DNA of 64,000 nt from positions 1-64,000 of the forward strand of contig NW_021832529.1 of assembly GCF_006345805.1 (NCBI RefSeq), written 5' to 3'. Made by a program: the position numbers and the translations under genes. Shown piece after piece: positions 8,842-64,000 of the stretch. Position 1 is the stretch's first letter. Each line of letters starts with the position of its first letter. The stretch is from Octopus sinensis (Eukaryota). Under the pieces are notes generated by a model that was not told where the DNA came from, made no database searches, and was given only the letters and a program-made list of their open reading frames with translations.

Positions 8842-8942
8842 GACTGAATGTCAAGAACAGATAAATGGTTTCTATGGCGCCAAGTTTAAGAAGTTCAGTA
8901 CAGAAGAGGAAGCTCTGGCTTTTGCAGAAATTCCGGCATCAG
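8842..8942 (+). CDS. RNASEH1-like: RNase H1-like exon: hybrid-binding domain
   Basis: ttcag|G ACT GAA TGT...TCA G|gtgaat; ECQEQINGFYGAKFKKF matches the RNase H1 HBD (ECRAQVDRFPAARFKKF). Confidence 0.92.
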
Positions 8943-11900
8943 GTGAATAGAATTTTAGTGCTGTTTGGTATAATCAGTAGAGTGTTGAATGAATATCTTG
9001 TGGTATTTAGCTCAGTTTTTTACGTTCTGAGTTCAAATCCTAGTTAGGTCAATTAACTTTCATCCTTCTGGGGCTCAATAATGGTCCAGTACTGAGATTG
9101 ATATAGTCAGCTGTTCTCTCATTGTGACTTTGTGTCTGTATCAAAAAATAATTATTGTGCAGGTTTGGTTGTGTTGTGAAGAAGCTTGCTTTGCAATCAT
9201 ATGATTTCAGGTTCAGTCCTACTATGCTTGCATTTTGGGCAAGTGTCTTATACTATAGTCCAGGCTGACCAATACCTTGTGAGTGAATTTGGTAAACAGA
9301 ACGTGGCCGATGCCAGCGCCGCCTTGACTGGATTCCGTGCCGGTGGCATGTAAAAAGCACCAATCCAATTGTGGCTGTTGTCAGCCTCACCTGGCACCTG
9401 TGCTGGTGGCACGTAAAAAGCACCCACTACACTCACGGAGTGGTTAGCATTAGGAAGGACATCCAGCTGTAGAAACATTGCCAGATCAGACTGGAGCCTG
9501 GTGCAGCCTTCTGGCTTCCTAGATCCCCGGTTGAACCATCAAACCCATGCTAGCATGGAGAACGGACGTTAAACGATGATGATGATGAAACTGAAGCCCA
9601 TCACACAAAGTGTGTCTGTCTTGTGTTTCTGCTTGACAACCAGAGTTAGTTTGTTTATGTGCCCATAACTTTGTAGTTTGACAAAAGAAACTGATGTAGT
9701 AAGTACCAGACTTTTAAAAAATTAGTACTGGCTCACTTTGTTCAACTAAATCGTTCAAGGCAGTGCATGGCTGCAATCCAAAAGCTGAAACAAATAAAGA
9801 TGAAAGATTGCTGTTGTGGCAGGATTAGTAGTGTCAGACAAAATGCTGTGCAGGTTTTGTTCCATCTCTTTCTATTGTGAGTTTAAATCCCACTATGATA
9901 AACTTTGTCTTTCATTTGTTGAGGGCCAATAAAAATAAAGTTCCAGGTAAGTACTATATTGGGCCACCATTGGTCAAGGCTAACCACATATCTGCTCTCG
10001 TGTATGTTTGAACAAGATTTTTGAAGAAGACTAGCAGATACCTATTCCAGTCACCCCATCAACTTGATGCCCTTGTTATTTGCAACCCTTAAGCAAGGTA
10101 ATATTTTCCCTCATAGCCAGACATGTTTTTCACAGGAGATTAGAGATAAATAGCATTGTTTTAATGATGGAGATGTTCATTTACAATCATCACATCACAC
10201 ACACACAAGGAACTTCTTTTAGTTTCCATCTTACAAATTCATTCATAAAGCTTTCTTTGGCCCAGGACTATAGCAGAAGATATTTGGTCTAGGTGCCACT
10301 GAACCTGAAACCATGTGGATGACTAACAAATTTCTTAAATACACACACACTCTCTCTGTCTCTCAGTGGATATATATTTAATAGTCTTTTCCCATTTTTG
10401 CTCTCCCAAGTAATTAGTGTTTTTTTGTTAATATTATGTAACTAATTTGCTATTTTATTTATATATTAACAGACAAAACTCTCTCCAGTGTAGCAAAATC
10501 TATTCAACCGATTGTGAAAAAACTCATGTCCAGAGTGAAAGAAGTCTCTCCTCTCTGTCAGACACTGGTGTCAATGCTGGCTGATTTGGATGACTCAGAA
10601 GAAAGCAAAGAATTTTCAACATTAGCATGTAATGTTGAAAATGATTTGGCTAAGTTGACAACAAGTGTTAAACTGGCAATTGATTCTAAGCTTTTGACAG
10701 GAACTACTAAGAGGAAGGCTTCTGATTCATCTGAAGACGCATCAGAACCTCCTGAAAAGAAGAAGTGTGTTGAAGAAGAAGGAGGTTTTACTGGTAATGT
10801 ATCATGTTTTCATTCTCCTTTTAAGAGATTGTTAATATTTTATTATTGTTTTTTGTTAATGAAAACTTGCAGCTTATTTTGCTTGGTATGATAAAAAGTG
10901 TCAGCTTCTCCTAGCCAGCAGGCTAAAGTGACACTTGTTTACTGATCATGGTTCAAGAACTCTGTGGAGAACTCTTGCAGTTCCAAGCAATGCTGATTTT
11001 TACAGGTGTTCTATTTTTACATTTGTACCAATCTTCTTGAGCTGTATTGGTATTTGATAACTGCTGATTCTTCCACCTGCACCAATCACTATTTGTATCA
11101 TGTCCACTCTCTCCATTGCCCATAACCTGTGTATTTCCCACTTCAATTCATCATAGTTGTTCACTTTTTCTTTTTCTTTCTCTTCGATCCTGTTATCACC
11201 AGACATGCTTGTCAATTATCAGGCATATTTTATTTTATTTTCTGTTCACCACAACAATGTTAGGTTTCCATTGTCTAATCTGATGATCACACTGAATCAT
11301 TGTATTTCACAGGGTTTTGCAATCTTCATTCGCAGTAATTCCCTCTGAAATTTGGTCATACCATGTCTGATCTTTCTAGGCCATAATTTCCACAAATCTC
11401 CAATGGATCATTCTTGCCTCATTGTCTTGTCGTCTTTGTATTTACAATGTGCTGATTTTGGTTATTCACTAACAATGCACACTGTTTCACTCCTCTCACC
11501 ATTCATTTGGCATTTGTCACTCTTAGTTGTGCTATCAATTTTGCACTTTAAATAGTTTGTCCTCAATGCTTGTTCTTGTGCTGTGCATATAAGTGCTTCT
11601 GTGTCTGTCTTGGAGCTCATATCTCTTGCAAACTGACTGTACTTTTTTTTGTGTTCTTTTCTTCTTTAGATTTCTCTTTCTTAACACAATTATCAATTTT
11701 AATGATTTTGGACTTCTTCACATGTATCAGCAATGGTTCTGTGGTATTTTTTACATATCATCCTAAGCTGCTTTTCTCTGCTTCAACACAATCCCAGCAA
11801 CTGATCAAATCCTTCCCATCCTTTCTTCTGGACAAGTACAACCTATATGTATCACTCTTGGAATAAATTGTTCCATGATCTGTCAATAGTTTCCATGACT

Positions 11901-14341
11901 TCATAATCATACTCATCAGTCAATAGTTTCTGTGTCTTTGAATCCATACTCATCATCATCATCATCATTATTATTATTGCAATCCCTACCAAGATCTACT
12001 TTGCCATTCACCTCTCCATGGTTAATAAAATAATGTACTTGTCAGTTACAAGGCAGGTTTTGTGCCTATACTAGAAACAATTATTATTATTAGGGATTGG
12101 TAGAATCAGTAGAGCATCAAGAAAATTTCTCACATGTGTTTGCTCTGGCTCTTTATGTCCTGAGTTCAAATTCTGCCAATGCCAACTTTGTCTTTCATCC
12201 TTTCAGAGTTGACCTTGAACTCACCAATCAAGTAAGTTTAAGGTCAATGGTTTTGACTAACCTGCTCCCCTCAAAAATGTTGGCCTTGTGCCAAAATTAA
12301 AATCATTGGTATAGTCTCTCACCAACGCTTCTCAGCCTCTGGGTCACAAACATGCTATTCCTTCACTCTGCCTTTTCTACCACTGATGCTGTGGTTTCTG
12401 CTCTTTGGAGCTGGCTGGTCTCAAGCCAATTTCTCTCATCTCTATCTTACTCTCCTCTGCCATATTCTGTCTAACTACTATGCCCAAGCCTACTTCACCA
12501 GGACATCAGTCTTTTGAAATCTACTTGCTACTCTTCTTTTCCTGGAGTTGTATATAAACATAAACCACATTGATCTCATTGGTTTTGGAAGATTTGTCAG
12601 ATATTCGTAGAGCCCTTCCTCACAGTAAAATTGATAAAAAAGAAACAGCTTAACAATTACATTCACTCATTTGTCTCACCCAAATATTCTCCCTAGAGAT
12701 TACACTCTCCATAATTTCTAGCCAGTTCATAGATGATTTATATAAAGAGCCAGGCAACAATATATTTTTTATAATTTCTATAAAGAGCCAAGCTGCAATA
12801 TATTTTTATATATAATTTATGCAAATTTTTTATTTACAGGGAAAAAATTGGCTGATGATGATAAAGATGTTTTCATTGCTGGCAGCTGTCTCAACAATGG
12901 TAAACCTGATGCCTCAGCTGGACTTGGTGTCTACTGGGGAGAAAGAGAAAAGTAAGTTTTTTGTTGTTGTTTTGTTTCTTGTTAGCGCTTGACTAATAGT
13001 CACATAACAACATGGGATGGATGGGGATAGAGCTAGAAATATAGAATGTGGTCCCCCATTTCTATTTATTCTTTGGGAACAGAAGGATTATTGTGCCTTT
13101 ATAGATTTGAATTGTTTCAATATATCGCTTAGTAATGTTTCTATAAGCCATAACCTATCTGTCTTTTGTATATTTAGGACTACTTTATATAGTTTATCTT
13201 TTATGTAAAACAGTAAGGCTGTGATATGATGGGAAGAAACTTAGCAGATTTTCCTAGGAGATTGAGTGGGTAGAAACAACAAGGATGAGGGGGAATAATT
13301 TCTTTGGCATCAAGGAGGAATTGCAAGTGAAAAAGCATCTGTTGGGGTACATCTGTGTTGAGGAAAATAAGGAGTCTCCGATTTTACAAATTTATAGTTA
13401 CGTCACGTTAAATTACTCTTTTGGACTTAAGGGTTGAACTTAGTTTTATATGGGTTTTTTTTAGGTTACATCAGTGGCTGGTTTCAAATTTCACCCTCAG
13501 GTAATGTGTGGTCCATCCATCACATATAGATTCCTTTGTTTGCTCAGTTGAAGATTTTGTCAGTGTCAGGAACAACATTGCCTGGACTGAGTTGCAGTAT
13601 GGTGGTCATATTAAGATAATGGCACCTAATTTACTCCTTTAATTCATGTATATCTTTGTCATAATAAATATCCCTCACCCCTCATACTCTCCATCACAAA
13701 TTAACTGGTAAGTCTTTACTTTATGTATTGAAGTTTGTTAAAATGTTGGTTTGTATATTGATAGGCGTTTCAGGGTGTGAACATTGTATATACTCTTTTT
13801 GTGTATGAATGTGTGTATATAGTGTGTGTAAATGTGTATATTTGTATGTCTGTAAATGTGTATCAGTCGTATCATTTTTGTGAAACCTGTCTTCCAGTTC
13901 GCTTTACTCACCCCTCTCTGCATGTATATTTGTATGAACACAGATTGGCGGGGAGGCCTAGTAGTTAGTGTTGAACTTGTGAATGTGAGATCATTTCCTG
14001 GACTGGGCTGCTTGTTGTGTTCTTGAGTAAAACATTTTGTCTCACGTTGCTCTGCAATCACTTTGACATCTGATGTATGACACATCATCCATCTGTACAA
14101 ACAGTGTCAATTTGATGGAGGGAGTGACCTAATGTGCAGTACAAACTTTTGATCTCTATAAACATCATCTGTGCAGGTGTTTCATTGAGAGTCCATGTAT
14201 GTACAGACACACATATATTTCTCAGCACTATTTTTAACACAAAAATATGAATCGCTATTCTGTTCACATATCTCTTTCTTTCCCCCTCTCTCTCTCTGTT
14301 TGTCTTTCTCTGTATAATGACATGTGTATACACATTCACAC

Positions 14342-14383
<42 letters not shown>

Positions 14384-17300
14384 ATGTATGTATGTATGAA
14401 TATGACACAATATTATTTATCTGTCTGTATACATATGTATGTTTATACAGAAACTCATTTATCAACAAAATCATTAAAGATATTTAGTCAATTGGAGATA
14501 TGACTATAGAAAGCATGAAATGTTTTATTTTCAAAAGCATTAGCTTTATTTAACTAAATGTTTCTAACAATCACATAGAGAAATTTGTGTTTATCTGTGT
14601 ACATACATTCACACATACTGAGAAAGAGTTACACAATGAATACAGTTATATTCATAAGAATGTGTATGTGTGTAGTGTATCATTGTATAGGGAATGAAAG
14701 ACTTGACAGACTGAAAGAATGGAGATTCTTATTTTTTTCCTTCCAATATTGCAATAAGCTACTTCTTCTAAAAGATCAGTCTGTCTGTCTATCTACTTAC
14801 CAGCTATCTACTTATCACAATTTTTTTACTTTGAATGTGCACGATGGTGTATAGTGTGTGTGTGTGTATGATGATATATGTCGGATTGTGTGTATGTCTG
14901 TAGGTGAGTATATATGATGGTGTATGTTGCTTTGTGTATGTATATGATTGTATTTGAAGATGTATATTGGTTTATTGCTTCATATGATGAAAAGCAGTGT
15001 AATTTTTATTAGTCAGCAGAATTACTAAGTCTAGCATGCTCTGTTTTTACAGGAACACAAGTGAAAGACTTGGTGGCCGACAAAAAAGCAATCGCGCTGT
15101 ATTATATGTAAGCTATTCTATTTAAGTTTTCAAGTGAAAATACTGAGAGAATTATTTGTTGGGAAGCTCCTCATTAATTGACACCTTGTGTGTGGAGTGG
15201 GGGTGACTTCATCTGAAGGCACAAAAACTCTTCCCCCTTCTTGCTATTGTAACTTCAACCTTTATATTTAAGCATCTAGAGATGTTTTTTTGTTTTTGTT
15301 TAGTCTTTTTCTAAAATGAAATTATTTTGTTTGCAGGCTGCCATTAGAGCTGTTGAACAAGCAAAGGCCAAAAAGATTTCAAACCTTATTATCAAAACTA
15401 ATAATCAGAACCTAATAGACAGTAAGTTATGTTTGTTTCTCCTATGAATCAACTAATCCTTAACCTATTTAGTGTTTGTGGATGTTATTCCCTAACTTCT
15501 TTCATTTCGAACCCAAGTATTTTACTTCCATCAGTGAATGTCCAGAGGATCTCTTAGTGTTGTGTGTGACTGCATCCTATTGCAAAATTACTATATGTTA
15601 AGGTTGAAGCAGAAAATTGTGCATGTTATTTTAGATCGATGCTGATTGAACAAAGCAGACTATCCCGTTTTTTTATTTTTTTATTTCTTAAATGTATCTA
15701 GAACTACATTTATCCAATGTGTCTATCCATTTTTAAGATGGTAGGGAGTGATTTGAGGGAGATCAGATTGCTATTTCTAGCATGTTAAGTAATTATAGAG
15801 CCTCCCTCATTGGCCTGGGGATTAGGTATTTCCAGAATACCTCTTTTACAATATTCACCTTTAGCAGCAGGGCTTTTTACATGTAGTCTTCCAGGAACAA
15901 ATTGGCAGGACTTACTACAGATGTTTATATTGTTTATTGGTCAGCTTCATTGTAGCAAATAACAGCTGGAGCTACACTTATCTTTGCTCTTCACAAAATA
16001 TTTGTACAAGTAAATCTGTTACAGGTAATATTTATGTGGAATACTTTTGTTTTTATTTTTCAGTTTGTTTATCTACTTCTCATTCATCATAATATTGTTA
16101 TTTCTGTTTGTATAGCTGTGCATGGGGAGACTCATTGAACCAAGTGACACCATAGTCATGACCTTTGCTAGTGTCATGTAAATGGCACCTGTGAAATCGT
16201 AGTCATGGCTGTTACTGGTGTCATGTAAAAGGTGCCCATGCCAGTGGCACATAAAAAGCACCCATTACACTTTCAGAGTGGTTGGCATTAGAAAGGGCAT
16301 TCACCTGTAAAAACCCATGCCAAATCAGACTGGAATCTGGTGCAGCTCTCCAGCTTACCACTTCCAGTCAAACCATCGAACCCATGCCAGCATGGTAAAC
16401 AGACATTAAATGATGATGATAATGATGATAGCCACACCCACATCTCTCATGTCACAGGTGTTATTTTATTAACCATACATATCTTGGAACTATTGGGTCA
16501 TGCCATAAATAATGTGGTTTTTTGTACTTCTTTCATTTTTCAAAATTAAGATAAACAAAATTCTTTTCCAGTCTAAAATATACTCTCCTTCATTTTCTAC
16601 AATGCTCTTCCATATATCTGGTACACTTGCCCCTCTTCCAAAATTCACTTGTCTGTGACGAAAAATACTCCTCCAGTACAGTTCTGACCTCATCTGCAGA
16701 ATTCCTATTTTTTAGCCCAAATAATTTTGAAGACTGCAGAATAAATGATAATCAGATGGGGCAATGTCCGGTGAATATGGTTTCCCATTCAAACTGCTCA
16801 AGCCTTTGGAATGTCATCCTTGCTATATGTGGCTGAGCATTATTCTGATGGAAGAACACCTTTCGTCTTGAAACCAAAAATAGTTGTTTTTCTTTTAGTG
16901 CTGACTTAAGTTGCTCAAGCTGCTCACAGTAGATCTCCTTTGTTACTGTTTGGTTTGGGTTTAAAAGTTCAATGTGGACTAAACCTTTCATATCCCACCA
17001 TACAGATAACAACACATTATGTGGTGCCAGTGTTTCTCCTTTTCCTACCCACTGTCTTCAGTGCTTGACATGTTTATAGAGAACCCATTTCTTGTCACCA
17101 GTCACTACTTGGTCCAAAAAAGTTCATTTGTGAGATGTAACAGCAAAGAAGAACACCCATTCACTCTCTGCGCGCAATTAGACTCAGGACGTTTGTGGGG
17201 GACCCATTGACCTAATTTGCTGACTTTTCTAATGGCACACAGGTGTTGATGAATGGTTGAATGACCAAATCCAAGTTTCTCTGCTAGTTCCTCAACAGTT

Positions 17301-18243
17301 ACAATGGGATTTTGTTCCACCAGGGTTTGCAGGATGTCCTTGTTGGGCTCTACAGATCTTCCAGAATGAGGCTCGTCTTCTAGGCTGTAGTTTCTGGCTC
17401 GGAATTTCTGGAACCACTGTTGATACTGGCTTATGCTTATTTCTGAACCCCATATACTGCATTAATATACCTTGCAATTTCTGTTGCTTTGTTGCCTTTA
17501 TTGAACTTATAAAGCATAATATACCGAATATGCTCCTTTGTCATTTCCATAACAGCTTTGACAAAATAACTGTTAAAATTGCACTGTACTCTTCAAAACT
17601 TGCACTAAGAATAAGCACAAGGTAAAATTAGAAACAAAGTGAGGGTTGACAATAGGAAATACATCTGGCTGTAGAAAATCTGCCTTAACTATTTCAGTCT
17701 GATCCATGCAAGTATGGAAAAATGGATGTTAAATTATGATGATGGTGGTTTCTCTGGTGTTTGCTGTCATTATTGACTTCCATGATAATTACTTTGTGTA
17801 TTTGTGTATCTTAATCATGAGAGAAGTGGGGCCTTAACCTGAGCGTCAACACTTCAGAGCTTGCAATAAATTTAAATTAAAAGGAACCAAGAGATTAACA
17901 CAAATACTTGCAACAGAATAAGTTAGAGGCCATTAGTGACCAGAGGGTAGTGTTACGCTGGGTGGGATTTTAAATGTAACACCAAAAAGTTAGGCCTAAG
18001 ACAATAATGTTAAATCTGTTCCTTCTCTCCCTCACACCAGGTATAACTAAATGGTTGGAGGGTTGGAAAAAGAAGAACTGGATGAAATCAAGTGGAGAAG
18101 AAGTGACAAACAAAGAAGAACTGCAGGAATTGGATAAGAAATTGGAGGGAATCAATGTTAAATGGGTAAGTTTAAGCAGGACGAACTGGGAAGCTAAAAG
18201 AAAACTCTATCATGACATCTAAACCAACTGAAGGATTTTATTC

Positions 18244-18280
<37 letters not shown>

Positions 18281-20468
18281 AAACATGTTTGATTGTGTGC
18301 TTTGTTTTTTTTTTCCATTGTGGTCTAATTAGAAGAGGTTAAGATTACTTATCAAGGTTTGCAAAGATTTTGGTAAGAGATTAGAAAATCTGACTGTAAT
18401 TTTGGAGGAGAAAAATTTTTCAGTCTGTGTGCTTTTTACCTTTCCTACTGATCATCTTGATGATATAGTAGAAGTTGATGATGGTATGAGGGGTTTCTTC
18501 CATATGTTGCAGACTGTTAGGTTTGGTTGTGTGAGCAGTGTGGAAGGACATATCTAGGAGAATGGTTTCAGTCCCACATTTAACTGTCTGATGAGTCAGA
18601 GGTGAAACATATGTTGTGAAGAGTCATCAGTGTAGAACTGGTAGTGTCAACCAGTGAGTTGAGGTACCAGAGAACTGGCAAGGGTTGTTGTGCTTTGATT
18701 AGCTGTAAGTTGGAGCATTCTGTGAGGTGCAACTCTAAAAATGTTGTTGTTTTAACCCTAATTGAACAGACTTATGATCAAAGGTATTCTAGCCAAGGCC
18801 ATGCATCTTTTCTGAAGTATGTCCTATTCCAAGACAGCAGGGTGTGATTTAAGAGAAATTTGGCTTTTTCTAGCAAGTTGTTACTACTTAGATGCTCTCT
18901 CCTCCCTTTTCTCTGATAATGAAGTAAAAGCTTTGAGGTGAGAAATAGATCAATAATTTTTTAATATTTAATTTTATGGATTTGGGCAGGTGACAACACA
19001 AATTAGTGCAAAATTTAGGGATGGAAAACTGCTCATCCTCAACAGTAGCTGCATTGGTGTAGGAGGAGTGAGAGAGGAAAGAAATGTGATGAGAATAAGT
19101 ACAAAGAAAGGTGAGGCAAGATGTCATCAGTGTAAAATAATTGGTAGTTGAACTACTGTTGATGTTGGAGAGGTTTGAAGAAAAGTAGTGGCTATAAAGA
19201 AACTTAGCAGGGAGACTTAGAGCCACAGTAACTGGAAGTCTTTTTGCTTCCACTCTCTCCTCTTCTCATCTGGTTATCAACCAAATAATACTTTTCAGTG
19301 TGTGAAGGTGGAATATAGAATGTAGTCTGAACAACAGATGAACTGGAAATAGATGAGAAATAGCTGGCACAGAAAAGAATAAAATTTGAATGAGGGAGGA
19401 GAAAAGCAAGTATGCATATGTACACCCCTGCCACACACATCCTTAACTCTCTTAAGTTTGTTTCAACTACTGAATGAACTAGCACAAAGAATTACAATGT
19501 TCCAGATGATCTATTCTCATTGACAGATTGTCAAAGAACTCTAGAAGAATTAAATGTCATTTTAATCTCTCATCAAAAATTTGAGTAGATGCCTAGAAAA
19601 TTTTTCATGTCTAAAAATGTTAGTAATAACTTTCTATTATTCAAAGAAACAAGAAACTTTTCTTTAATAACCAATGAAAATAGTCATAAACAGTTGTTAT
19701 TATATATTGCCTAGCACTTAGAAGAAAGGGGTTTTAAAGAAAATAGTGTATTTGAATGGTTGTTTTTAATTTAAAAAAACACTATTTTATGAATGAATCA
19801 ATGCTTAAAATTTTAGACATGAATTTGAAACAGAAAAGGCAAGATACCTACTTAACTCTTTTGAGAGAAATATTAGTATAATTTGTAACTTGATTAACCA
19901 AGGAATGGTCAGTACTTAATAACAAACCAGTGGGACTGGTTTATTGTAATTAGAATTATTATTAAAAGAAAGAAAAGTGTTGGCCTTGTGCGAAAATTAG
20001 AAAGAATTATCAATATGAATTGTGTTCATGGCCCATGTAGGCCCTCTAAGAGTGGTTAAGTTGGCTGCTTCAAGTTGATTGCTACAGAAAGAACTAGGGC
20101 AGGAAGGGAATTCCAATGGGATGTTATTCAGGGAAGGGAAGGACTTGGAAGTGATTATTGTAGGCCTGGGAATACAATATGCATGTTTCAAATTGGTACT
20201 AATGTTTAGAGATTTTTAAAATTATTATTTTATTTAATTTTATAGTTTAATGAGAGTTTCTCTAATTTCTATTCTCAGTCTCCGCATAGGAGAATAAAAA
20301 TAGATAGGCTGTGGATAGCCTCCTCTTTACATCAACAAGTAAATATAAAAATTATTTTGATTGTATATTATTTCTATTTCCTAGGTCCATGTGGATAAAT
20401 GTTGTGCTGGAATCGAAGCTGCTGAACAATTGGCCAAAAAAGGAGGAGAACTTCCTCTACCTGAGTAG
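8842..20468 (+). CDS. RNASEH1-like: RNase H1-like protein with inactivated catalytic site (5' exon(s) not found in window)
   Basis: Exons 8842-8942, 10473-10793, 12840-12951, 15053-15108, 15337-15421, 18041-18165, 20385-20468, all AG/GT-bounded. Hybrid-binding domain (W)TECQEQINGFYGAKFKKFSTEEEALAF; RNase H domain VFIAG..NNG..A.AGLGVYWG..RQKSNRAVI..AAIRAVEQAK..IIKTNN..ITKWLEGWKKKNW..V.NKE..WVHV..GIEAAEQLAKKG. Phases join except a +1 mismatch after 15108. Confidence 0.9.
9160..9590 (+). mobile_element. Composite SINE: tRNA-like head plus terminal module
   Basis: GTG.GAAGAAGCTTGC...GGTTCAGTCC...TTGGGCAAGTGTCTT head joined to GGCACGTAAAAAGCACCCACTACAC...(GAT)n. Confidence 0.7.
10473..10793 (+). 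CDS. RNASEH1-like: RNase H1-like exon: long helical linker with bipartite NLS-like motif
   Basis: aacag|AC AAA...ACT G|gtaatg; phase 1-1, open frame, ends KRKASDSSEDASEPPEKKKC. Confidence 0.85.
10930..11890 (-). mobile_element. Degenerate restriction-like-endonuclease non-LTR retrotransposon (R4/Dong/NeSL type) 3' part
   Basis: Minus strand gives GERSETV.IVSE, IHW..CGNYGLER, IQCDHQI..KP.IVV, D...GDNRIEEKEKEKV..Y.ELK.EI.RLW.M..IVIGA.G; multiple stops and frameshifts. Confidence 0.75.
12090..12300 (+). mobile_element. tRNA-derived SINE
   Basis: GAGTTCAAATTCTGCC..GCCAACTTTGTCTTTCATCCTTT...GGCCTTGTGCCAAAATT. Confidence 0.7.
12840..12951 (+). CDS. RNASEH1-like: RNase H1-like exon: beta1-beta3, first catalytic Asp replaced by Ala
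   Basis: VFIAGSCLNNGKPDASAGLGVYWG vs canonical VYTDGCCSSNG...AGIGVYWG; GCT codon at 12878-12880. Confidence 0.92.
14346..14400. repeat. (TA)n/(TATG)n microsatellite
   Basis: Direct inspection. Confidence 0.9.
15053..15108 (+). CDS. RNASEH1-like: RNase H1-like exon: helix A, catalytic Glu replaced by Val; 1 nt too long
   Basis: NTSERLGGRQKSNRAVII vs NVGIRLPGRQTNQRAEIH; tttacag and gtaagc boundaries; 56 nt. Confidence 0.85.
15337..15421 (+). CDS. RNASEH1-like: RNase H1-like exon: catalytic Asp replaced by Asn
   Basis: AAIRAVEQAKAKKISNLIIKTNNQNLID vs [28 protein letters not shown]. Confidence 0.9.
16140..16425 (+). mobile_element. SINE terminal module with internal short repeats
   Basis: Repeated GTGTCATGTAAA..GCACC units, then GAGTGGTTGGCATTAGAAAGGGCAT and (GAT)n. 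Confidence 0.65.
16490..17480 (-). mobile_element. Mariner (DD34D) transposase relic
   Basis: KVSKLGQWVPH; MLLSVWWDMKGLVHIELL...YCEQL..L...FHQNNAQPH; C-terminal IVENEGEYILD; frameshifted; only one TIR-like end (~16492) seen. Confidence 0.85.
18041..18165 (+). CDS. RNASEH1-like: RNase H1-like exon: basic protrusion
   Basis: ITKWLEGWKKKNWMKSSGEEVTNKEELQELDKKLEGINVKW vs [27 protein letters not shown]. Confidence 0.93.
20385..20468 (+). CDS. RNASEH1-like: RNase H1-like terminal exon: His loop lost, last Asp replaced by Glu
   Basis: VHVDKCCAGIEAAEQLAKKGGELPLPE* vs [28 protein letters not shown] at 20503-20508. Confidence 0.88.
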   Translation, partial: VHVDKCCAGIEAAEQLAKKGGELPLPE

Positions 20469-20930
20469 ATTTTCCTGCATGTTGTTAATTGGAATGTCAA
20501 CAAATAAATCATAAAGTCACACACACACAAACACAGTCTCTCTCTCTTGCACAGATATAGTGATAAGCATAATCTTACAATAATACTTTCCAAACATCCT
20601 CTCACAAAGATATATAGTAGTATTTCTACAATAAAAGATATATGCATTCATAATTTAGTTCATGTGGTTATTTCTTGTTGGTGCGTCAAATAATTATGAT
20701 AAAAGTGGCATAATTGAAATATGTTTACAATAAAATAGCAGAGAAAATATAAAGACTCCAGTTACAAAGAAAAAGTGATTAGCCAGTCATCTGGCAAACA
20801 ATGTGCTATTCTGATACTTTCTGTGGGTCTGTTTCTCTTTTCTAACCAAAATTAGTTTTTATGTCTGTGTATCATCATTATTTTTATATCCCATTTTTCA
20901 GACAGACATAGGTTGGACAAGACTACAACA

Positions 20931-22084
20931 CTAGCAAATCTACCCATCTATGATGGGGACATAAAATGAGGGAGGGCGGTCACAAGAGCAGTATGTATTG
21001 AGAAATGTATAAATGGACTTGATAGATTATTGGGTGATGTCTTAAAGAAATCACATTATTGTTGGTGATGCAGCATTCTATTGCAGCTACATGACATGTT
21101 TGCGACTAAGTGACGTGATGACAATTCACTCCCGAACTGAAATAAGCTCCTAGCCCCTGTATCCTGAATGGTTATGGGGACCACACCTAACAAAAGCCAG
21201 ACCTTCCTTCAATCACTACACAAAAAGTATTAAGAAAAAAAATGTTATTTAGATATACTTTTATTTTAGTTGTTTACGCTATTTTATGCAGGCTTATAGT
21301 CTTAAACATTCAAAGTTCACAAATTTCCTTATTTAAATTGTGAATCATATTCCTTTCGATAATATCAATATGATTACAAAACTTCTTTGTAGACGATATT
21401 TTCTCTTTGGTCGACACTAATTTTCAAATTACTGGAGTCCTTTTCTCTACTCATGGCGACATATAACTGGCTGTGTGTAAACATCAGAACAGGTAAAAAT
21501 ACTCCTACACGATCTAAAGTCTGGCCTTGTGCCTTGTTTGCTGTGAATGCATGCACAAGTAGAATCTTTAGGTATCTGCCCATCTACGATGGGAAATAAA
21601 GGGATAGTATCGCAAATCTAAACCCTCTAAATTCACGAACTATATAGGGAGGGGAATCCAGAGTTAATCCTCGTTACTGGAATTTAAGAAAAAAATCAAA
21701 GGTGATTTATTGATACAAAACTCGATATACACTAAATAATCATACTTCTTCACATTTTTTCCTATTTACCTCCTTTGTAATCCGGCCATTTGACCATGAA
21801 AAGGGAGCAGACAGACGGAAAGACATAACACTCATTATAAGAAGTTGACTTACTTCCCTTTACTTCTTTTATTAGTTATCTCCCCCGTAATTTTTATTTA
21901 CTTTTTTACACCTGTGAACTGAACAATTACCTTCAGTATCCAGTAATAATCGTAATTTTTCATGTTTTTTTCACTAAAAACTTCCTTGATTTCCTCCTTC
22001 ATAATTCTGAAAAACACTGGTCCAGCTCTTTGACCATGAAGAGGGCAGAGACAGATGGATATAACGCCCATTATAGTAAAATGA
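20931..22084 (-). mobile_element. Composite non-autonomous Helitron with helicase C-terminal fragment
   Basis: 5' A|TC at 22084 (second TC-like start at 21848); hairpin CCCATCnnnGATGGG plus CTAG|T at 20931-20957; second hairpin plus CTAA at 21568-21593; PIF1-type fragment in between. Confidence 0.75.
21374..21560 (-). pseudogene. Helitron Rep/Hel PIF1-helicase C-terminal fragment
   Basis: AFTANKAQGQTLDRVGVFLP..FTHSQLYVAMSR..NIVYKEVL matches helicase motifs V-VI (TINKSQGQT, HGQLYVA.SR, N.VY.EV). Confidence 0.85.
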
Positions 22085-22189
22085 TATCCTTCCTGTCACC
22101 AACTCTTGTTTTTTTCTTTTTTTAAGTAAGGTATTTTTATTCCATTAGTATTAACATGTTGCTGCCAATGAAACTTGAGCTACAGGATG

Positions 22190-23511
22190 CATTGTTTACC
22201 TTGGTAGATAAAGCAATTAAGGGTATGAAGACAGGGAAAGCTTCCAGCCCATCAGGAATCACCGCAGAGATGCTTAAAATATCTAGCAGTGTTGGCTATA
22301 GTCTAGTCACCCGTATAGTCAATCAGGTGACACATGAAAGAGGAGCAGCACCATAGTCAACTGCTACAAAAGTAAAGGTGATGATGTATTAGATACGAAT
22401 AATAATAGAGGTATTAAGTTGTTGGATCAGGTAATGAAAGTCACGGAGAGGGTCAGTTTAGATGAGATGCAGTTTGGGTTTGTGCCAGGAAAAAGCACCA
22501 CTAATGCTATATTTCTGGTAAGACAACTGCGGGAGAAATACCCAGCCAAAGATAAATCTCTGTACCTGGCTTTTATTGACATAGAGAAAGCCTTTGAAAG
22601 ACCTGGGATGAGGTGGGCCTCACAGTGGCGTTGACAAGTTTCTCCTCCCATTCATTCTCCACATTCAGCAGTCTTTCATAATAACATTTTGAAGCCTCTT
22701 TCTTTGCATAATCATTAAATACAAGTGCACCATCATCCATGCAGACACATTTATCTCCTATGACATCACGATTTCTCTCATAAACTGTCTTGAAATCCGA
22801 AACACTCTGTATTTAAGAGCAACAATGCATCCTGCTGCTTGGTGAGAATGTAATCAATCTGGCTAGCGTAGCCACCTGATTGGTAGGTTATCAGCTGGCT
22901 GGTCAGCTTCTTGAAGTTAGTGTTGCAGATCAATAGGTTATTTGCATTACAGAACACCAGTAACCCTGTTCCCTCCAATTCCATGGCCCCCATGTACATC
23001 ATGGAAAATACCGGGCTGCCGTTTGATATGCTCATTGAAATACCCAGCCACAAAGATGAGATTCTTGTCATTTGTCTTGGAGGTAGCCTGCAGGAGAATA
23101 TCATAAAAATAGTCCTTCTGTTCATTTAGTAGGCTTGCTTGTAGGGTATAGACAGAGATAATTGATGCTATGCTATTCTGCAAGACTAGCCCAAGCTTAA
23201 GCACTCTATTGCTCACTCTGACTACTTCTATGACCTTATCTACCCATTTCTCTGCAAGAAGTATACCTACACGTCTTGCCTGTGAGGAACATGGCTGAAG
23301 CTCCTCCCCACCTTACCTCCTGAATGCAGCATACAACAACATGCCTCCATTCAAGCAGCTCAACAATCTTGCAAGATCTACTTTTCAATGTGCCTATATT
23401 CACAGTGCCAACCCTGAGAACTGGGTAAGGGACACTGGAGGTTACATGGGCAGGAGAGATGGTATTGGGCACCTGAAAAGAAAGTTTCAGTGATTGTTTG
23501 GCAACAGACAT
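22190..23511. mobile_element. RTE LINE relic with internal inversion
   Basis: APE and linker on - strand 23511-22605 (RVGTVNIGTL, CIQEVRW); RT piece on + strand 22190-22603 (KASSPSGITAEML, LDEMQFGFVPGKST); homologous to 33390-35230. Confidence 0.85.
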
Positions 23512-24204
23512 GTCACATCGGTTCGTCTTGCTTTAACCTACCATCATTCAAACATGTTAAAATTGTTGTCCCTATTGGTAGTGAGTAGCGTTGTAAATAT
23601 AAGCGTTACTGCTGCAAATATAAATAGGTCAATTATATAAATGATCTGCCACGGTTAGTCCATTATACATAGGGAGAAAGAGGTAGGTGGCATGTTAATT
23701 TACTAATAATTTCCTAAGTAACATATCACCCTTTGGTGCATGCAGTTTTGTTTGTAGTGGGGAAGGAGGGAAGAAGGTATGTAAGTCTTCTGGTTCAGAA
23801 GCAAGGCAGAGCCCTGTAGGGGTTTCCAGTATAGGTGGTGGGGGCACTGCAGACAAGCAATGGCCAGTTTACTATTGTTGGGGAGAGAGACATGACTATA
23901 TTGAGAGACATAAGTAAAACAAGAATGCATACAAATTTTAGAGAACAATGTCGAAAACATTATGAAACAGTGACAGAGAACTAAGATTTTAGGGAATTAC
24001 AGTTTGAAGGTTATTTGAAGAATCAAACATGTAATATAAACATGATAGTACATGTTGGTATTACGGGTTACATGAGTGAATGAATGAATGAGGCAATTGA
24101 GAAAATGAGAGAAAAATTCTTAGCTATGCATATTGCAAAACAACAGTGAATCAAGTGGCGTAAAAGTCTAAGAAAACATGTGCTAAAGATCCTTTATAAG
24201 AACT

Positions 24205-24230
24205 ACAGCCGGAAGTGGTCAAATAAGATG
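24205..24230 (+). promoter_or_regulatory. Housekeeping-promoter-like site: ETS motif followed by ATG|GT first-exon end
   Basis: ACTACAGCCGGAAGT (CCGGAAGT at 24209-24216), then AAGATG|GTCAGT; good acceptor at 24358. Confidence 0.35.
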
Positions 24231-25444
24231 GTCAGTTTTATTTAAGGAAAAGTTTGGTAACAAAACTAAAATCAAAAAGGAAAATTTTTTGTTTTTAGAT
24301 TGAAACAATAAATCAGATTCATTTCTTTAAAATAATAATTTACATATTTTATTTACAGTTGGTAAAGAAACTTTGTTTGGACAGTATGAAATCTCTGATT
24401 TTGGCTATTCTGGTCAGTATTGTATTGGTCATGTTAGATGTTTCATTTAATTATATTCTCAGTCAAATATACTTAGAAACCAAAGGAGTTCCTATCCACA
24501 ATCTTGGTTATGTTTCTGACTAACATTAATAATATCTATGAGAAAAGCATGTATATCACATCTCATTCCCTTATGAAATTTTTGGGGGACAAAAACAGTT
24601 AAAAGACATTAGTATTTATTTACTTATATGAAGCATTGTAGCTTGATTTTATTATTACAGGTACAACATTGATTTTCTGAAAACTTTCAGATGACTGATT
24701 TTTCCAAACCAGGGGTGGTCACCTCTATATTAAACAAATATTAAATTTACTTAATTAAATGAAATATAGAGCTACCAAGTAAGCTAGTCTGGCAACTGTG
24801 AGAATTTGAAGTTCCTGTTCATAAAGCAGAGTGGATTACAAGAGGTTCTGGACCATCAGAGTCCGGAAAGTCAGTGTTGTACCTATTTAGAACTTAAATA
24901 TTACAAAAGATAGGGGATGGGAGCAAATATTTGATAATTCTTGTTTGTCACAAAGCTGGACTTCTCTCCAAACTATGTCAACATAAAAATATCTTTCAAC
25001 TAGATGTAGGGCGTTGTGTAAGATGGTGTACCAAATTCAGTGTATTACTGGTATGTATCTTGGCACAAAGCCAAGGAAATGGGATGCAATATATGACCTG
25101 GTGACTATTTTTTCAACCTGCAAGGCTGAAAGAGTCTCGGTGAGATTTGAACTCAGAAAATAGATATATCTAAATATTGTCATCAACCACTTTTATGTGT
25201 AATTCTATTTTTAAACAGATACAAGAACACATTTCTAGGGAGGAGTGTAATTGACTCAATTGATTCCTCCAGTAATTCATTGGTCCCAGAAGGATGAAGG
25301 GAAAATCTGTCTTGGCTGAATTTCAATGAAAAAAGTTAAATTGTTGTAACTAAATTGCATTTCAATTTAGAGAAGTGTTGATTACAGCAACCCCATTATT
25401 TGACAAGAAATTTATTTTATCAATCAAAATCAAAGTGAAATTCG

Positions 25445-25955
25445 ATGACAGGCACCCGTGCTAGCGGGGTGCAAAGAGCACCATATGAGCATGATCGTTG
25501 ACAGAGCAGCTAACTGGCTTCTGTGCCAGTGGCACATAAAAGGCACCATTCGAGTGTGATCGTTACCAGTGTCGCCTTACTGGCACTTGTGCCCCGTGAT
25601 AGTAGGGTGCTAAGAGCACCATCCGAGCGTGATCGCTGCCAGAGTGGCTAACTGGCTTCGGTGCCGGTGGCATGTAAAAGGCACCATTCGAGCAGGATCG
25701 TTACCAGTATTGCCTTACTGGCACCTGTGCCGGTGACATATGTAAAAAGATTTGAGCGAGGTCGTTGCCATTACTGCCTGACACGTAAAAGCACCCACTA
25801 CACTCTTGGAGTGGTTGGCATTAGGAAGGGCATCCAGCTGTAGAAACTCTGCCAGATCAAGACTGGAGCCTGGTGCAGCCATCTGGTTCGCCAGCCCTCA
25901 GTCAAACTGTCCAACCCATGCTAGCATGGAAAGTGGATGTTAAACGATGATGAAC
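25445..25955 (+). mobile_element. SINE terminal module preceded by GC-rich minisatellite
   Basis: Repeated GGCAC.TAAAAGGCACCATTCGAG..GATCGTT units, then standard module and (GAT)n. Confidence 0.75.
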
Positions 25956-26893
25956 CCTCGGAAGGACAATAGGCAAAGTTCATCTCAGAGGGATTTAATT
26001 GCAAAACGTTAAACGGCTTTAACTAAATGCAGCAAAACATTTTGTCCAACACTAAAGATTCTCCCATTCATCATCCTCTAATAATTGCTTCCAATATAGG
26101 CACAAGGCCAGACATTTAGATTGAGGAAACAGTTAATTATATTGCCTCCATATTACTTACCAAAAACTTTATTTTCCTTAACCACACCAAAGAATGGAAG
26201 GTAAAGTTGACACCAGGGGATTTAAACTTAGAATCTAAAAGGTTGTATTGAAACACCACAAGGTATTTTATTTGCTATGAATCCACATCCCTCTAGTATT
26301 AAAAGTCAGTCAGAGTTCATATTTAGAATGGAGAGATAGGAAGTTGTGACATTTAGATATATTAGCAAAGTAGGTTAAGTACTTTCTGCATAAAACTGAA
26401 ACTAAACTGAAGACTAAGGTCAATCATGCACAGCTGGTGATAGGTTTATGATGTTTATGCCTTTACTAAAATCTTTGGTAGCATAAACAAAATGGCATCA
26501 TCCAGAATGTAAAAAGGTAGTATAGTGTGTATAGTGCAATGTTTGATAATATAAATAATAATTGATTTTAATGCAGGTAAGGAGGTTGTGATGTTCATGT
26601 ATCTCTGAAGAATGTTGGTGTACCATCTTGTCAATAACCTCTACTAAATATGCCAAATAGATTCTGTAATCATTGGTCAGCCTTAACCATACAAAAGTTG
26701 TGAAATTCATGCCTTACCTAAGGACAGGAAAAAAATACAACTGTGAATCAGATGATTTCTGAATTAAGCCTATTGAGATTGGGGAAAGGAAAAAGGAGTT
26801 TGTGTTATCTATTCAGAGTTTTCCTAAGAGCACCAAGTCTGAACTGTTTCTGCAGAGAATTCATTTGCCAAGAAGACAGCTGTACATTATTTG

Positions 26894-61200: not shown

Positions 61201-63129
61201 AAAAGACTTTGTATGGATTGAATGGTTACCTCTATGGAAATATATACACGCACATTATACATACATGTGTGTATAGATGAATATATAAATACATTTAAAT
61301 ATCTATATACACTTTTGGGCGAACTTTCTGTTTCTTAGAGATAACTTTATCCCGTCCGATTCGCTCCAAAATTTACAGGGACATGTAGAATGAGGTGATG
61401 ATGCTCGTGGGCTACCTTAGAAATCCCTATCTTAAAAGGTGTGGTTGCTAGGGGCCATCTTCCTCACTCACCCTATTTCCTCCAGTACCCTGTCACTCCT
61501 CTTCATTTGACAGGCCACTACGTTTATTTAATGTAAAGTCTTCCTCAAATAACTCTCTCGCTATTTACTCCTATCTTCCAAGAACATTTTCACTCACACT
61601 TATCTCTTAGCTTCCCATACATTTTACTCATGTATCTATCAGCGTCATAGACAGAAACAAATATTACATCGCCATCGCATTCTATTGTCTACCTGTCAAC
61701 ACACATACAGTGAATTACTTTCACTTTATTCGTAGCACACTGTGTGTGTGCGTATGCGTGTGCTGTAGCCCACACTAAGAAAAGCATTTGACATACACAC
61801 CACAATGTGAGTTTTCTCTAAATTTTGCTTAATTGGGGTTGAAATTTTAAAAACTGGACCTGGCACGACCCGATGCATTCTACTCTTAAAAATGCTAGGT
61901 AAATTGTAATTGAAGAAATCCTATATTGTAGATTTCTATAAGATACAAAGGGAGGCAGATAAAATCTGCCTTTTATAATAAGAGATCCCTTGGTTCTGGG
62001 CGTGCAAGGCTGAACTTTAACGCTGTAAGATTTTACAATGTTCAACTGCAAACAGAACTGGTCAAAATGGCGTCCTTAGGGAGCGAAAATAATACGCGTC
62101 TGCTTCAATGAAAGGCTTTCTGCTGTCTGCTGACTGCTATGTGTCCCTCTGGACGCTCAGTTGGTCAACGTTTTACGCTCCTTTGCCTCTTTGTTAAGGT
62201 TCGCCTTCCCCTGCCATTCAACTAATGCCACGACAGCAAATCTGTTCTTCCGGTCATCGCGCATGCGCGAGAGGGTCTTCCCTTCCGCCTTCGCGTATGC
62301 GCGAGAGAGCGTTGCGCGCTCGCACCGTTGTATTGATCACTACAAATCTATTTACCACGCTCTGTATTTAGACACACACACATTTTCCGTTTTGTTGCTA
62401 GGAAACCATTAACTGTTGCAGATAGTGTTCTATTTTTATAAGACATCAGTGCTAGTTGCTGGCCTCTTAAGACGCCCGACCGCTATTTTAAATACACTCA
62501 AGCCTGCTTGCTGCTTAGATAATTTTATCGTCATGTCTGACTATCCTGTGAAAAAAGGACGTGAACCCGGGGTACATGAGACACGGTGAGACAATATTAT
62601 TATTAATAATTATTTGCACATATAATTTGCCATTAATAGCCGACGAGAATGTATCGTGGCTCTCCACTCCGATATTCGAAACTTTGAGTACTATAATGAC
62701 AACCTTTTACTGTTTGTTCTAAATTATAATATACTAGCAGTATCGCCCGGCGTTGCTCGGGTTTGTAAGGGAAATAACTATATAAGCATTTTTAGAGAGT
62801 TATAGCCAAAAAATAGCAAAACAATGCATTAAAAATGGAAAAAAAATTAAGGTAAATTTTTTTTAAATCGTTGACACATCGTAGATATTTTTAGAGAGTT
62901 ACTTCCCTTATATAATAGCGAAAAAATGCATTAAAATGGAAAAATATGATGGTAAATTTTTTTTAAATCGTAGACTCATCGTAGACGCGCGCTAATATCC
63001 AGAAGGGCTCGATATGACTCATGACTATAAGATACCCGGTTTTGGTTACACTGCACCGCAAAATGTGGGAGTAGTTAGGAATCTAAATCGTAGGAGACAG
63101 ACACACAACTTCAGTTTTATATATAAAGA
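52246..63129. repeat. Tandem array of ~1.935-kb Helitron-composite unit (~5.6 copies)
   Basis: Marker CTAGCAGTATCGCCCGG at 53059, 54998, 56929, 58866 (variant), 60794 and 62734; units nearly identical. Confidence 0.97.
62734..63129 (-). mobile_element. Short non-autonomous Helitron (family B), terminal copy of the array
   Basis: A|TCTTTATATATAAAAC at 63129; CCCGAGCAACGCCGGG hairpin plus CTAG|T at 62734; equivalent copies in each unit (e.g. 53059-53452, 54998-55390). Confidence 0.88.
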
Positions 63130-63910: not shown

Positions 63911-64000
63911 AAACAGAAAGGAGAAATTAGAGTGATAGCGTCAGTGAAACAGTTCGCTCCGTTTGTGTGTGTGTGCGTATGCGTGTGCTGTAGCCCAAAC

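What the first reader, a model, noticed from the sequence alone, without database searches (positions are those of the whole stretch)
8842..20468. RNase H1 homologue with every catalytic residue removed but hybrid-binding surfaces kept: candidate R-loop-reading pseudo-enzyme
Seen in the sequence: a spliced multi-exon gene with an HBD, a linker and a full-length RNase H fold. Aligned by eye to human RNase H1, the DEDD tetrad reads D145>A (VFIAG), E186>V (NRAVI), D210>N with S211>N (KTNN) and D274>E (AAEQLA), and the H264 loop (HVPGH) has become HVDKC. In contrast, the HBD FKK motif, the N151-equivalent NG, R179, the basic-protrusion W221/W225 (WLEGWKKKNW) and N240 (V.NKE) are retained, all splice sites are canonical, and no exon has an internal stop. 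Established: single D145N or D210N changes abolish cleavage while leaving binding, which is the basis of dead-RNase H1 R-loop probes. Inference: loss of all metal ligands with no general decay suggests selection for a non-cleaving RNA:DNA hybrid binder (R-loop or retroelement-intermediate sensor, protector or competitor of active RNase H1). I know of no described natural animal example.
Basis: partly seen in the sequence, partly recalled or inferred. Interest (0 to 1): 0.85.

Follow-up and report, generated by a model that had tools for sequence, protein, structure and literature searches.

The report
Fast-evolving dead RNase H1 gene copies
This octopus gene is one of several recent tandem copies of the RNA:DNA-hybrid-cutting enzyme RNase H1 that have lost their catalytic residues yet are changing their protein sequence far faster than neutral DNA, which points to a new, selected, non-cutting function rather than decay.

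Summary
The window is Octopus sinensis unplaced scaffold VCDQ01002521.1, positions 1-64000. The gene at 8842-20468 is real. It has seven GT-AG exons, no stop codon, half of a hybrid-binding domain (HBD), a linker and a full RNase H fold. D145A, E186V, D210N, H264C and D274E are all confirmed.

It is not a lone gene. It is one copy (W1) in a tandem RNASEH1 array found in O. sinensis and O. vulgaris. O. bimaculoides has a single intact gene in the 59 kb I could read. All six dead copies lack D145 and D210.

These copies are not decaying neutrally. Between copies, introns differ by 0.3-2.3% and synonymous sites by 0.5-1.6%. Non-synonymous sites of the RNase H domain differ by 4.5-12%. dN/dS is far above 1 (likelihood-ratio p down to 4e-5). 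The changes cluster around the former active site.

But the selection is diversifying, not conserving. W1 has also lost three substrate-contact residues (T181K, N182S, F213N).

Expression, binding, and the existence of a fully intact RNASEH1 in these two species could not be tested here.

The parts
8842..8942 (+). Exon 2 of copy W1: second half of the hybrid-binding domain (…GAKFKKFSTEEEALAF…). It starts with the last base of a Trp codon, so an upstream exon 1 is required.
   Evidence: Its protein is identical to exon 2 of the RefSeq model P0125.
10473..10793 (+). Exon 3: linker. The RefSeq model P0001 starts at the Met at 10526.
   Evidence: It is predicted as two long helices followed by a disordered stretch.
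12840..12951 (+). Exon 4: first strands of the RNase H fold. VFIAG gives D145>A. N151 is kept.
   Evidence: It has 12 substitutions and 1 gap against P0125 in 37 residues.
15053..15107 (+). Exon 5: GRQKSNRAVLY. R179 is kept; T181>K, N182>S and E186>V.
15337..15421 (+). Exon 6: KTNNQNLIDS. D210>N, S211>N and F213>N.
   Evidence: It has 11 differences from copy W2 in 85 nt, while the 229-nt intron 5 upstream of it is identical between the two copies.
18041..18165 (+). Exon 7: basic protrusion (WLEGWKKKNW). W221, W225, S233 and N240 are kept.
   Evidence: Its protein is identical to P0125.
20385..20468 (+). Exon 8: HVDKCC--AGIEAAEQLAKKGGELPLPE plus stop. H264>C, a 2-residue deletion and D274>E.
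20469..30510 (.). Downstream flank duplicated together with the gene. On the chromosome the matching stretch holds the 3' part of a COMM-domain gene on the minus strand.
   Evidence: It is 99.2% identical over 10 kb to the flank of chromosomal copy Z. The same flank follows copies W2, S559, V2 and V3.
52246..64000 (+). Six tandem units of about 1935 bp, each with an RNASEH1 exon-1 copy. They serve the next paralogue (W2), whose exons 2-8 lie beyond the window. The mitochondrial-presequence ATG is AAG in all six.
   Evidence: The RefSeq models P0128-P0130 start at MSDYPV….

Best explanation
The gene (copy W1) is one unit of a recent tandem segmental duplication of the RNASEH1 locus. The array lies between RPS7 and a COMM-domain gene and is shared by Octopus sinensis and O. 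vulgaris.

**What is shown.**
- The extra copies have lost the metal-binding carboxylates, so they cannot cleave by the RNase H mechanism.
- They keep open reading frames, every splice site and a confidently predicted RNase H fold.
- Their RNase H-domain exons accumulate amino-acid changes 5-29 times faster than their own introns, with almost no synonymous change.
- Exon variants are shuffled among copies and shared between the two species.

**What is inferred.**
- The copies encode non-cleaving RNase H1-derived proteins.
- Their former active-site and substrate cleft is being remodelled by diversifying selection.
- The basic-protrusion tryptophans, N151 and N240 are retained, which could still anchor a nucleic-acid strand.
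- At least the neighbouring copy's first exons have lost the upstream Met that would begin the presequence. The product would then be nuclear or cytosolic rather than mitochondrial.
- The pattern fits a genetic-conflict or specificity-diversifying role better than a housekeeping R-loop reader. Examples would be binding or sequestering retroelement or viral replication intermediates, or acting as a decoy or competitor for something that engages RNase H1.
For: **Identity and locus.**
- The window equals VCDQ01002521.1:1-64000.
- The array lies between RPS7 and COMMD. It spans 134 kb in O. sinensis and about 225 kb in O. vulgaris. O. bimaculoides has one intact 39-kb gene in the 59 kb read.
- Each copy carries the same downstream flank.

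**Loss of catalysis.**
- The six copies read A/Y at D145 and N/S at D210. E186 is V in three copies. D274 is E or N in four. H264 is C in five.
- GAT>GCT and GAT>TAT at D145, and GAC>GAA and GAC>AAC at D274, are each single steps from Asp. This implies repeated independent hits.

**Selection (Nei-Gojobori counts, RNase H domain).**
- W1-W2: 24.5 non-synonymous against 0.5 synonymous differences.
- W1-V2: 44.5 against 1.5.
- V2-V3: 35 against 1.
- Pairwise GY94 likelihood-ratio tests against omega = 1 give p = 0.0025, 1e-4 and 4e-5.
- pN against intron divergence is 6.7% vs 0.55%, 12.2% vs 2.3% and 9.6% vs 0.33% (Fisher 9e-17, 6e-17 and 6e-28).
- W1 and W2 differ by 95 substitutions over 12.8 kb, and 36 of them fall in the 883 nt of exon.
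- Across the six copies, 60 codon columns vary in amino acid and 2 vary only synonymously.

**Location of changes.**
- Changed sites cluster within 3 residues of catalytic or contact residues (OR 3.0, p = 0.0016).
- Against the same-species model P0125, W1 has 0 changes in exons 2, 7 and 8 but 12, 4 and 5 in exons 4, 5 and 6.

**Fold and integrity.**
- The RNase H domain is predicted at pLDDT about 96. It matches the human RNase H1 catalytic domain at TM 0.92 and rmsd 1.3 Å.
- Splice sites are intact in all copies.
- The mutation spectrum is broad, not A>G only.
- The first ATG of exon 1 is AAG in all six array copies.
Against: - There is no expression, protein or binding evidence. The database held no octopus transcript-derived RNase H1 at all, so absence is uninformative.
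- Only seven sequences were used, the pairs are not independent, and recombination or gene conversion among copies violates tree models.
- Several codons carry 2-3 changes. Multi-nucleotide mutations could therefore inflate dN.
- The HBD plus linker evolve at omega about 1.
- Some family members show real damage. V3 has lost the exon-3 acceptor and the FKK motif. Z has a 1-nt deletion in an A run. Three of six exon-1 copies are frameshifted.
- W1's own exon 1 is off the scaffold.
- W1 has lost T181, N182 and F213, so hybrid binding may be weakened.
- The scaffold is unplaced. The O. sinensis assembly of this locus is probably collapsed, so copy number and allelism (W1 vs S559 vs Z) are uncertain.
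Confidence: 0.55

Rival explanations
1. This is a conserved natural 'dead RNase H1' whose hybrid-binding surfaces are kept by purifying selection. It would act as an R-loop or RNA:DNA-hybrid reader, protector or competitor of active RNase H1.
For: - All five catalytic residues are replaced, while N151, R179, W221, W225, S233, N240 and the HBD FKK motif are kept.
- N151, W221, W225, S233 and N240 are invariant in all six dead copies.
- The fold is predicted with high confidence.
- Exons 2 and 7 are identical in protein to the P0125 model, which bears catalytic residues.
Against: - The RNase H domain shows omega far above 1, not below 1.
- W1 has lost T181, N182 and F213.
- Contact positions R179 and Q183 also vary among copies.
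- The HBD plus linker show omega about 1.
- In the neighbouring copy, the RefSeq models use an exon 1 that gives W43>R in the HBD.
Confidence: 0.15
2. These are young unprocessed pseudogenes. The redundant duplicates are drifting, and their open frames survive only because they are recent.
For: - Intron divergence is very low, so the copies are young.
- Some copies or exon-1 units are visibly damaged (V3, Z, three exon-1 copies).
- The HBD plus linker evolve at omega about 1.
- The RefSeq model P0001 lacks the HBD.
Against: - Neutral drift predicts that exon divergence equals intron divergence and that omega equals 1.
- Observed pN is 5-29 times intron divergence, and omega = 1 is rejected.
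- Changes are enriched at and near functional residues.
- Every exon 2-8 splice site mapped in the seven copies is retained; only V3's exon-3 acceptor could not be mapped.
Confidence: 0.1
3. This is one complex RNASEH1 transcription unit. The duplicated exon sets would act as alternative cassettes, spliced to the upstream canonical exons to give active and inactive isoforms from a single gene.
For: - Annotated models join exons of different copies.
- P0125 uses upstream exons 1-6 plus exons 7-8 of copy Z, about 130 kb away.
- P0016 uses upstream exons 1-5 plus exons 6-8 of copy V2.
- No annotated O. sinensis or O. vulgaris product carries all of D145, E186, D210, H264 and D274.
Against: - These are computational models over a repeat-rich and probably mis-assembled locus.
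- Each copy has a complete exon 2-8 set and its own exon-1 units with donor sites.
- I could not read the first 47-59 kb of either chromosomal locus, where the canonical copies' own 3' exons may lie.
Confidence: 0.1
4. The pattern is a mutational or gene-conversion artefact. Exon-limited patches would have been copied from an unseen diverged donor such as a processed copy, or produced by clustered multi-nucleotide mutation, without selection on the protein.
For: - Differences have sharp exon boundaries.
- Many codons carry 2-3 changes.
- Exon types are distributed among copies as a mosaic.
Against: - A donor that had diverged neutrally or under constraint would bring many synonymous differences. 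Only 2 of 62 variable codon columns are purely synonymous.
- Several positions have 3-4 different states among the copies, for example I/N/C/H at column 280. One donor cannot explain this.
Confidence: 0.07

Closest known systems
Eukaryotic RNase H1 (human RNASEH1; PDB 2QK9/6VRD)
   Same: - It has the same domain order: HBD, linker, RNase H fold.
- It is about 40% identical, with a predicted fold at TM 0.92.
- It shares the basic protrusion with W221 and W225.
- The chromosomal locus sits next to RPS7. From my own memory (not checked here), human RNASEH1 also neighbours RPS7.
   Different: - All four carboxylates and the histidine are replaced.
- T181, N182 and F213 are replaced.
- It is a multi-copy tandem family, not a single gene.
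- It evolves rapidly rather than under conservation.
Engineered catalytically dead RNase H1 (D210N or D145N) used as an R-loop probe
   Same: It has an RNase H1 scaffold without catalysis. W1 even carries N at position 210, as do the crystallised D210N proteins.
   Different: The laboratory probes change one residue and keep every substrate contact. The octopus copies change 39 of 144 domain positions, including contact residues. Their binding specificity is untested.
Multigene families with 'accelerated evolution', where exons diverge faster than introns (snake-venom PLA2 isozymes, conotoxins, some immune receptors). This comparison is from my own knowledge and was not checked here.
   Same: - Young tandem duplicates.
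- Nearly identical introns and flanks.
- dN far above dS, concentrated on a functional surface.
- Variant exons maintained across closely related species.
   Different: Those families encode secreted toxins or receptors. This one derives from an intracellular nucleic-acid enzyme and has lost its catalysis.
Active RNase H1 paralogue sets (four Arabidopsis RNase H1-like proteins)
   Same: Lineage-specific duplication of RNase H1 (bioRxiv 10.1101/662080).
   Different: According to that abstract the plant paralogues keep canonical activity and differ in compartment. The octopus copies are catalytically dead.

Membership tests
Type 1 RNase H / eukaryotic RNase H1 | RNase H fold (Pfam PF00075 above its gathering score) | tested here: met
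   73 bits against a cut-off of 25.8. The predicted structure matches the human catalytic domain at TM 0.92.
Type 1 RNase H / eukaryotic RNase H1 | N-terminal hybrid-binding domain (PF01693) | tested here: inconclusive
   Only profile positions 17-44 of 44 are encoded in the window. Exon 1 is not within the 8.8 kb upstream, where the scaffold starts.
Type 1 RNase H / eukaryotic RNase H1 | DEDD metal-binding tetrad (D145, E186, D210, D274) and H264 | tested here: not met
   The residues are A, V, N, E and C.
Type 1 RNase H / eukaryotic RNase H1 | Descent from the RNASEH1 locus (synteny) | tested here: met
   Sister copies lie between RPS7 and COMMD on the O. sinensis and O. vulgaris chromosomes, and the O. 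bimaculoides gene lies next to RPS7. W1 carries the same downstream flank. The scaffold itself is unplaced.
Type 1 RNase H / eukaryotic RNase H1 | [quoted passage not shown] | not testable with these tools
   This needs recombinant protein. Loss of all the carboxylates predicts no activity.
Pseudoenzyme (dead paralogue retained by selection) | Catalytic residues lost while the fold and reading frame are kept | tested here: met
Pseudoenzyme (dead paralogue retained by selection) | Evidence of selection on the protein sequence | tested here: met
   Omega is far above 1 and pN is far above intron divergence. The selection is positive, not purifying.
Pseudoenzyme (dead paralogue retained by selection) | Expressed and translated | not testable with these tools
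   Only RefSeq and author gene models exist. No transcript-derived octopus sequences were found in the databases.
Unprocessed pseudogene | Disabling mutations (stops, frameshifts, lost splice sites) | tested here: not met
   W1 has none. They are present in some relatives (V3, Z, three exon-1 units).
Unprocessed pseudogene | Neutral evolution (omega about 1, exon divergence equal to intron divergence) | tested here: not met
   This is rejected for the RNase H domain. It is not rejected for the HBD plus linker.
Accelerated-evolution tandem gene family | Exons more diverged than introns, with dN above dS among young paralogues | tested here: met

The most novel reading that the evidence does not exclude
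Octopuses of the vulgaris/sinensis lineage have turned duplicated RNase H1 into a rapidly diversifying family of non-cleaving proteins. The family would be engaged in a genetic conflict. It might act as restriction factors or decoys that recognise retroelement or viral RNA:DNA intermediates, or the proteins that handle them. Exon variants would be kept diverse by selection while introns are homogenised. A further possibility, which the evidence does not exclude, is that no single gene in these species encodes all five catalytic residues and that active enzyme depends on splicing across copies.
Probability: 0.2. Interest if true: 0.88.

Novelty: new variant of a known kind. Interest (0 to 1): 0.72.

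Why it matters
RNase H1 is usually a conserved single-copy enzyme. Dead versions are known only as laboratory tools for mapping R-loops. A natural, multi-copy, catalytically dead family under strong diversifying selection would show that the RNase H1 scaffold can be recruited for a non-enzymatic role. It would also point to an unrecognised conflict or regulatory system in cephalopods, and it would supply natural variants of the substrate cleft for probing hybrid recognition. Finally, it raises a practical question for cephalopod genomics: which copy supplies the RNase H1 activity thought to be needed for mitochondrial DNA replication?

Tried and rejected
- **Exon 1.** I searched for exon 1 of W1 upstream of 8842 by HBD motif and tblastn and found none. 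The scaffold starts there.
- **Chromosomal DNA of the canonical copies.** The copies bearing catalytic residues (P0125, P0016) could not be fetched because the gene ranges exceed 100 kb, and P0002 is not on record. I also looked for a 99-residue neighbouring gene that might give access to that region and found no candidate ORF. Whether O. sinensis or O. vulgaris has a fully intact RNASEH1 therefore stays unresolved.
- **RNA editing.** Hard-wired RNA-editing changes were rejected as the cause because the substitution spectrum is broad.
- **Assembly error.** This was rejected because the same states occur in two species and two independent assemblies.
- **W1 as a haplotig of copy Z.** This was considered because of the 99.2% identical 10-kb flank. 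It is weakened because every copy, including the internal O. vulgaris copy V2, has that flank.
- **Tandem Repeats Finder.** It could not see the 1.9-kb exon-1 array. The repeat finder did.
- **COMM-domain exons.** A six-frame look for them at 26-33 kb gave nothing recognisable by eye.
- **Literature.** Searches for natural dead RNase H1 paralogues, octopus RNase H1 and the C. elegans rnh-1.x genes found nothing relevant.
Full report
**1. What is in the window**

Motif and tblastn searches locate an RNase H1-like gene on the + strand. Reading the junctions gives seven exons: 8842-8942, 10473-10793, 12840-12951, 15053-15107, 15337-15421, 18041-18165 and 20385-20468. All introns are GT-AG and the 294-codon frame is open to a TAG.

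Pfam finds RNase_H (73 bits, cut-off 25.8) and the C-terminal 28 positions of the 44-position RNase H1 HBD profile. The best solved relatives are the human RNase H1 catalytic domain and HBD.

The V codon is inside the exon, because the stronger GTAAGC donor lies two codons further on and restores the human spacing.

Exon 2 begins with the last base of a Trp codon, so an exon 1 is needed. None lies in the 8.8 kb upstream.

**2. Where it comes from**

The protein search identifies Octopus sinensis. The window is positions 1-64000 of unplaced scaffold VCDQ01002521.1. The RefSeq model P0001 equals exons 3-8.

The gene is not alone. I call the window copy W1. Exon mapping across fetched loci shows these further copies:
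- W2, on the same scaffold, preceded by six tandem exon-1 units that lie inside the window at 52.2-64 kb.
- S559, on scaffold VCDQ01002559.1.
- Z, on chromosome CM016872.1.
- V2 and V3, on the O. vulgaris chromosome.

The chromosomal arrays lie between RPS7 and a COMM-domain gene. They span 134 kb in O. sinensis and about 225 kb in O. vulgaris. In the 59 kb read, O. bimaculoides has one 39-kb gene next to RPS7 with all catalytic residues intact. The Argonauta protein is also intact.

Every copy is followed by the same flank of at least 6-10 kb (97-99% identical). For Z and V3 that flank contains part of the COMM-domain gene. The duplication unit is therefore the gene plus its downstream flank.

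**3. State of the catalytic and contact residues**

Across the six extra copies:
- D145 is A or Y.
- D210 is N or S.
- E186 is V in three copies.
- D274 is E or N in four copies.
- H264 is C in five copies.

Several of these states are independent single steps from the Asp codon.

For the contact residues listed for human RNase H1 in PMC5363678:
- N151, W221, W225, S233 and N240 are invariant in all six copies.
- R179, T181, N182, Q183 and F213 vary among copies.
- W1 itself carries T181K, N182S and F213N.

Among 131 RNase H1 homologues from animals, only the O. sinensis and O. vulgaris proteins lack a full DEDD tetrad.

**4. Is it decaying?**

All copies keep the splice sites. The one exception is the exon-3 acceptor of V3.

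Nei-Gojobori counts for the RNase H domain (exons 4-8) are extreme:

| Pair | Non-synonymous | Synonymous |
|---|---|---|
| W1-W2 | 24.5 | 0.5 |
| W1-S559 | 16.5 | 0.5 |
| W1-V2 | 44.5 | 1.5 |
| V2-V3 | 35 | 1 |

A pairwise GY94/F3x4 likelihood fit that I wrote rejects omega = 1 for the five dead-copy pairs tested, with p from 0.028 down to 4e-5.

Introns give an independent neutral yardstick:

| Pair | Intron divergence | RNase H non-synonymous divergence | Fisher p |
|---|---|---|---|
| W1-W2 | 0.55% | 6.7% | 9e-17 |
| W1-V2 | 2.3% | 12.2% | 6e-17 |
| V2-V3 | 0.33% | 9.6% | 6e-28 |

Further observations point the same way:
- In a 12.8-kb alignment, 36 of the 95 W1-W2 substitutions lie in the 883 nt of exon. 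Exon 6 has 11 differences, while the 229-nt intron 5 upstream of it has none.
- Over the six copies, 60 codon columns of the domain vary in amino acid and only 2 vary purely synonymously. The HBD plus linker show 25 against 7, which is about neutral.
- The substitution spectrum is broad, so hard-wired A-to-I editing is not the cause.
- Changed positions cluster within three residues of catalytic or contact residues (OR 3.0, p = 0.0016). W1 differs from O. bimaculoides at 39 of 144 positions but at 5 of 5 catalytic ones (p = 0.0012).
- Against the same-species model P0125, which keeps D145, E186 and D210, W1 has no change in exons 2, 7 and 8. It has 12 (plus a gap), 4 and 5 changes in exons 4, 5 and 6.
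- Exon variants (FIAG/FIYG; NRAVLY/IQAEIN; KTNN/NTSS; AAEQ/AADK/AADN/AANI) are recombined among copies, and some are shared between the two species.

Neutral decay predicts that exon divergence equals intron divergence and that omega equals 1. Purifying selection predicts omega below 1. Neither is seen. The pattern is that of diversifying selection on a young tandem family. In form it resembles the 'accelerated evolution' families in which exons outrun introns (a comparison from my own knowledge).

**5. Fold**

An AlphaFold2 model of P0001, built with a 50-sequence alignment, gives pLDDT of about 96 over the RNase H domain. It superposes on the human catalytic domain at TM 0.92 and rmsd 1.3 Å. 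The alignment guides this model, so it shows compatibility with the fold, not proof of folding.

**6. The exon-1 array**

In all six units the upstream ATG of canonical exon 1 is AAG, leaving only the second Met.
- Three units are intact.
- Two units carry a 1-nt deletion, and one has indels and a stop.
- Two of the intact units end in CG|GT. After splicing this gives W43>R in the HBD, as in the RefSeq models P0128-P0130.

In mammals the two in-frame AUGs give the mitochondrial and nuclear forms (established knowledge, not checked here). The inference is that products starting in this array are not mitochondrial. W1's own first exon is unknown.

**7. What remains open**

- No annotated O. sinensis or O. 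vulgaris product carries all five catalytic residues. P0125 has D, E, D but C264 and E274. P0016 has D, E, H, D but S210. Both models join exons of different copies.
- I could not read the first 47-59 kb of either chromosomal locus. A complete canonical copy may exist there.
- The O. sinensis assembly is probably collapsed, so W1, S559 and Z could be partly allelic.
- Expression could not be tested.

**8. Verdict**

This is a catalytically dead RNase H1 derivative on which selection acts. But it belongs to a rapidly diversifying tandem family whose substrate cleft is being remodelled. It is not a conserved hybrid reader.

I found no description of such a family, within the limits of the library searched. 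I rate it a new variant of a known kind (a pseudoenzyme by duplication) with high interest. The conclusion is conditional on transcript evidence and on a finished assembly of the locus.

Noticed in passing
window 52246-64000 (also L006 4105-15851): There is a tandem array of six units of about 1935 bp (seven on the chromosome), each carrying an RNASEH1 exon-1 copy with its donor site. In all window copies the first ATG (start of the presequence) is AAG. Three copies are frameshifted or interrupted, and two give W43>R after splicing. In the part of the O. vulgaris locus read (L001), a single intact exon 1 stands at the equivalent place.
   Followed up: partly
window 20469-30510: This stretch is 99.2% identical to the region downstream of chromosomal copy Z, where the 3' part of a COMM-domain gene is annotated on the minus strand. 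The same flank follows every RNASEH1 copy, so a piece of that neighbouring gene has been duplicated with each unit.
   Followed up: partly
window 33277-35726 (+): ORFs that look like LINE-type apurinic endonuclease and reverse transcriptase (my reading of the translations, no domain search) lie between W1 and the exon-1 array. Related fragments occur in the introns of the other loci.
   Followed up: no
window 45783-49983 (+) and 50749-52232 (+): ORFs that look like LTR-retrotransposon gag, protease-RT-RNase H and integrase (my reading of the translations, no domain search) lie in a G+C-rich block (46-51% GC). A second partial pol copy follows. The 3' end is 99.3% identical to the start of chromosomal locus L006.
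   Followed up: no
L006 61551-81495 and L007 12473-41301: Copies Z (O. sinensis) and V3 (O. vulgaris), both next to the COMM-domain gene, have a 20-kb and a 29-kb intron 4 respectively, against about 2 kb in the other copies. This marks them as positional orthologues.
   Followed up: no
L004 37206-37289: The single O. bimaculoides gene has a small duplicated fragment of exon 4 (VVFTDGCCFHNGKHGASAGLGVF) in intron 4, about 190 bp downstream of the real exon.
   Followed up: no
window 10526-10700 (P0001 residues 4-58): The linker between the HBD and the catalytic domain is predicted to form two long helices (pLDDT 74-88) rather than a disordered tether.
   Followed up: no
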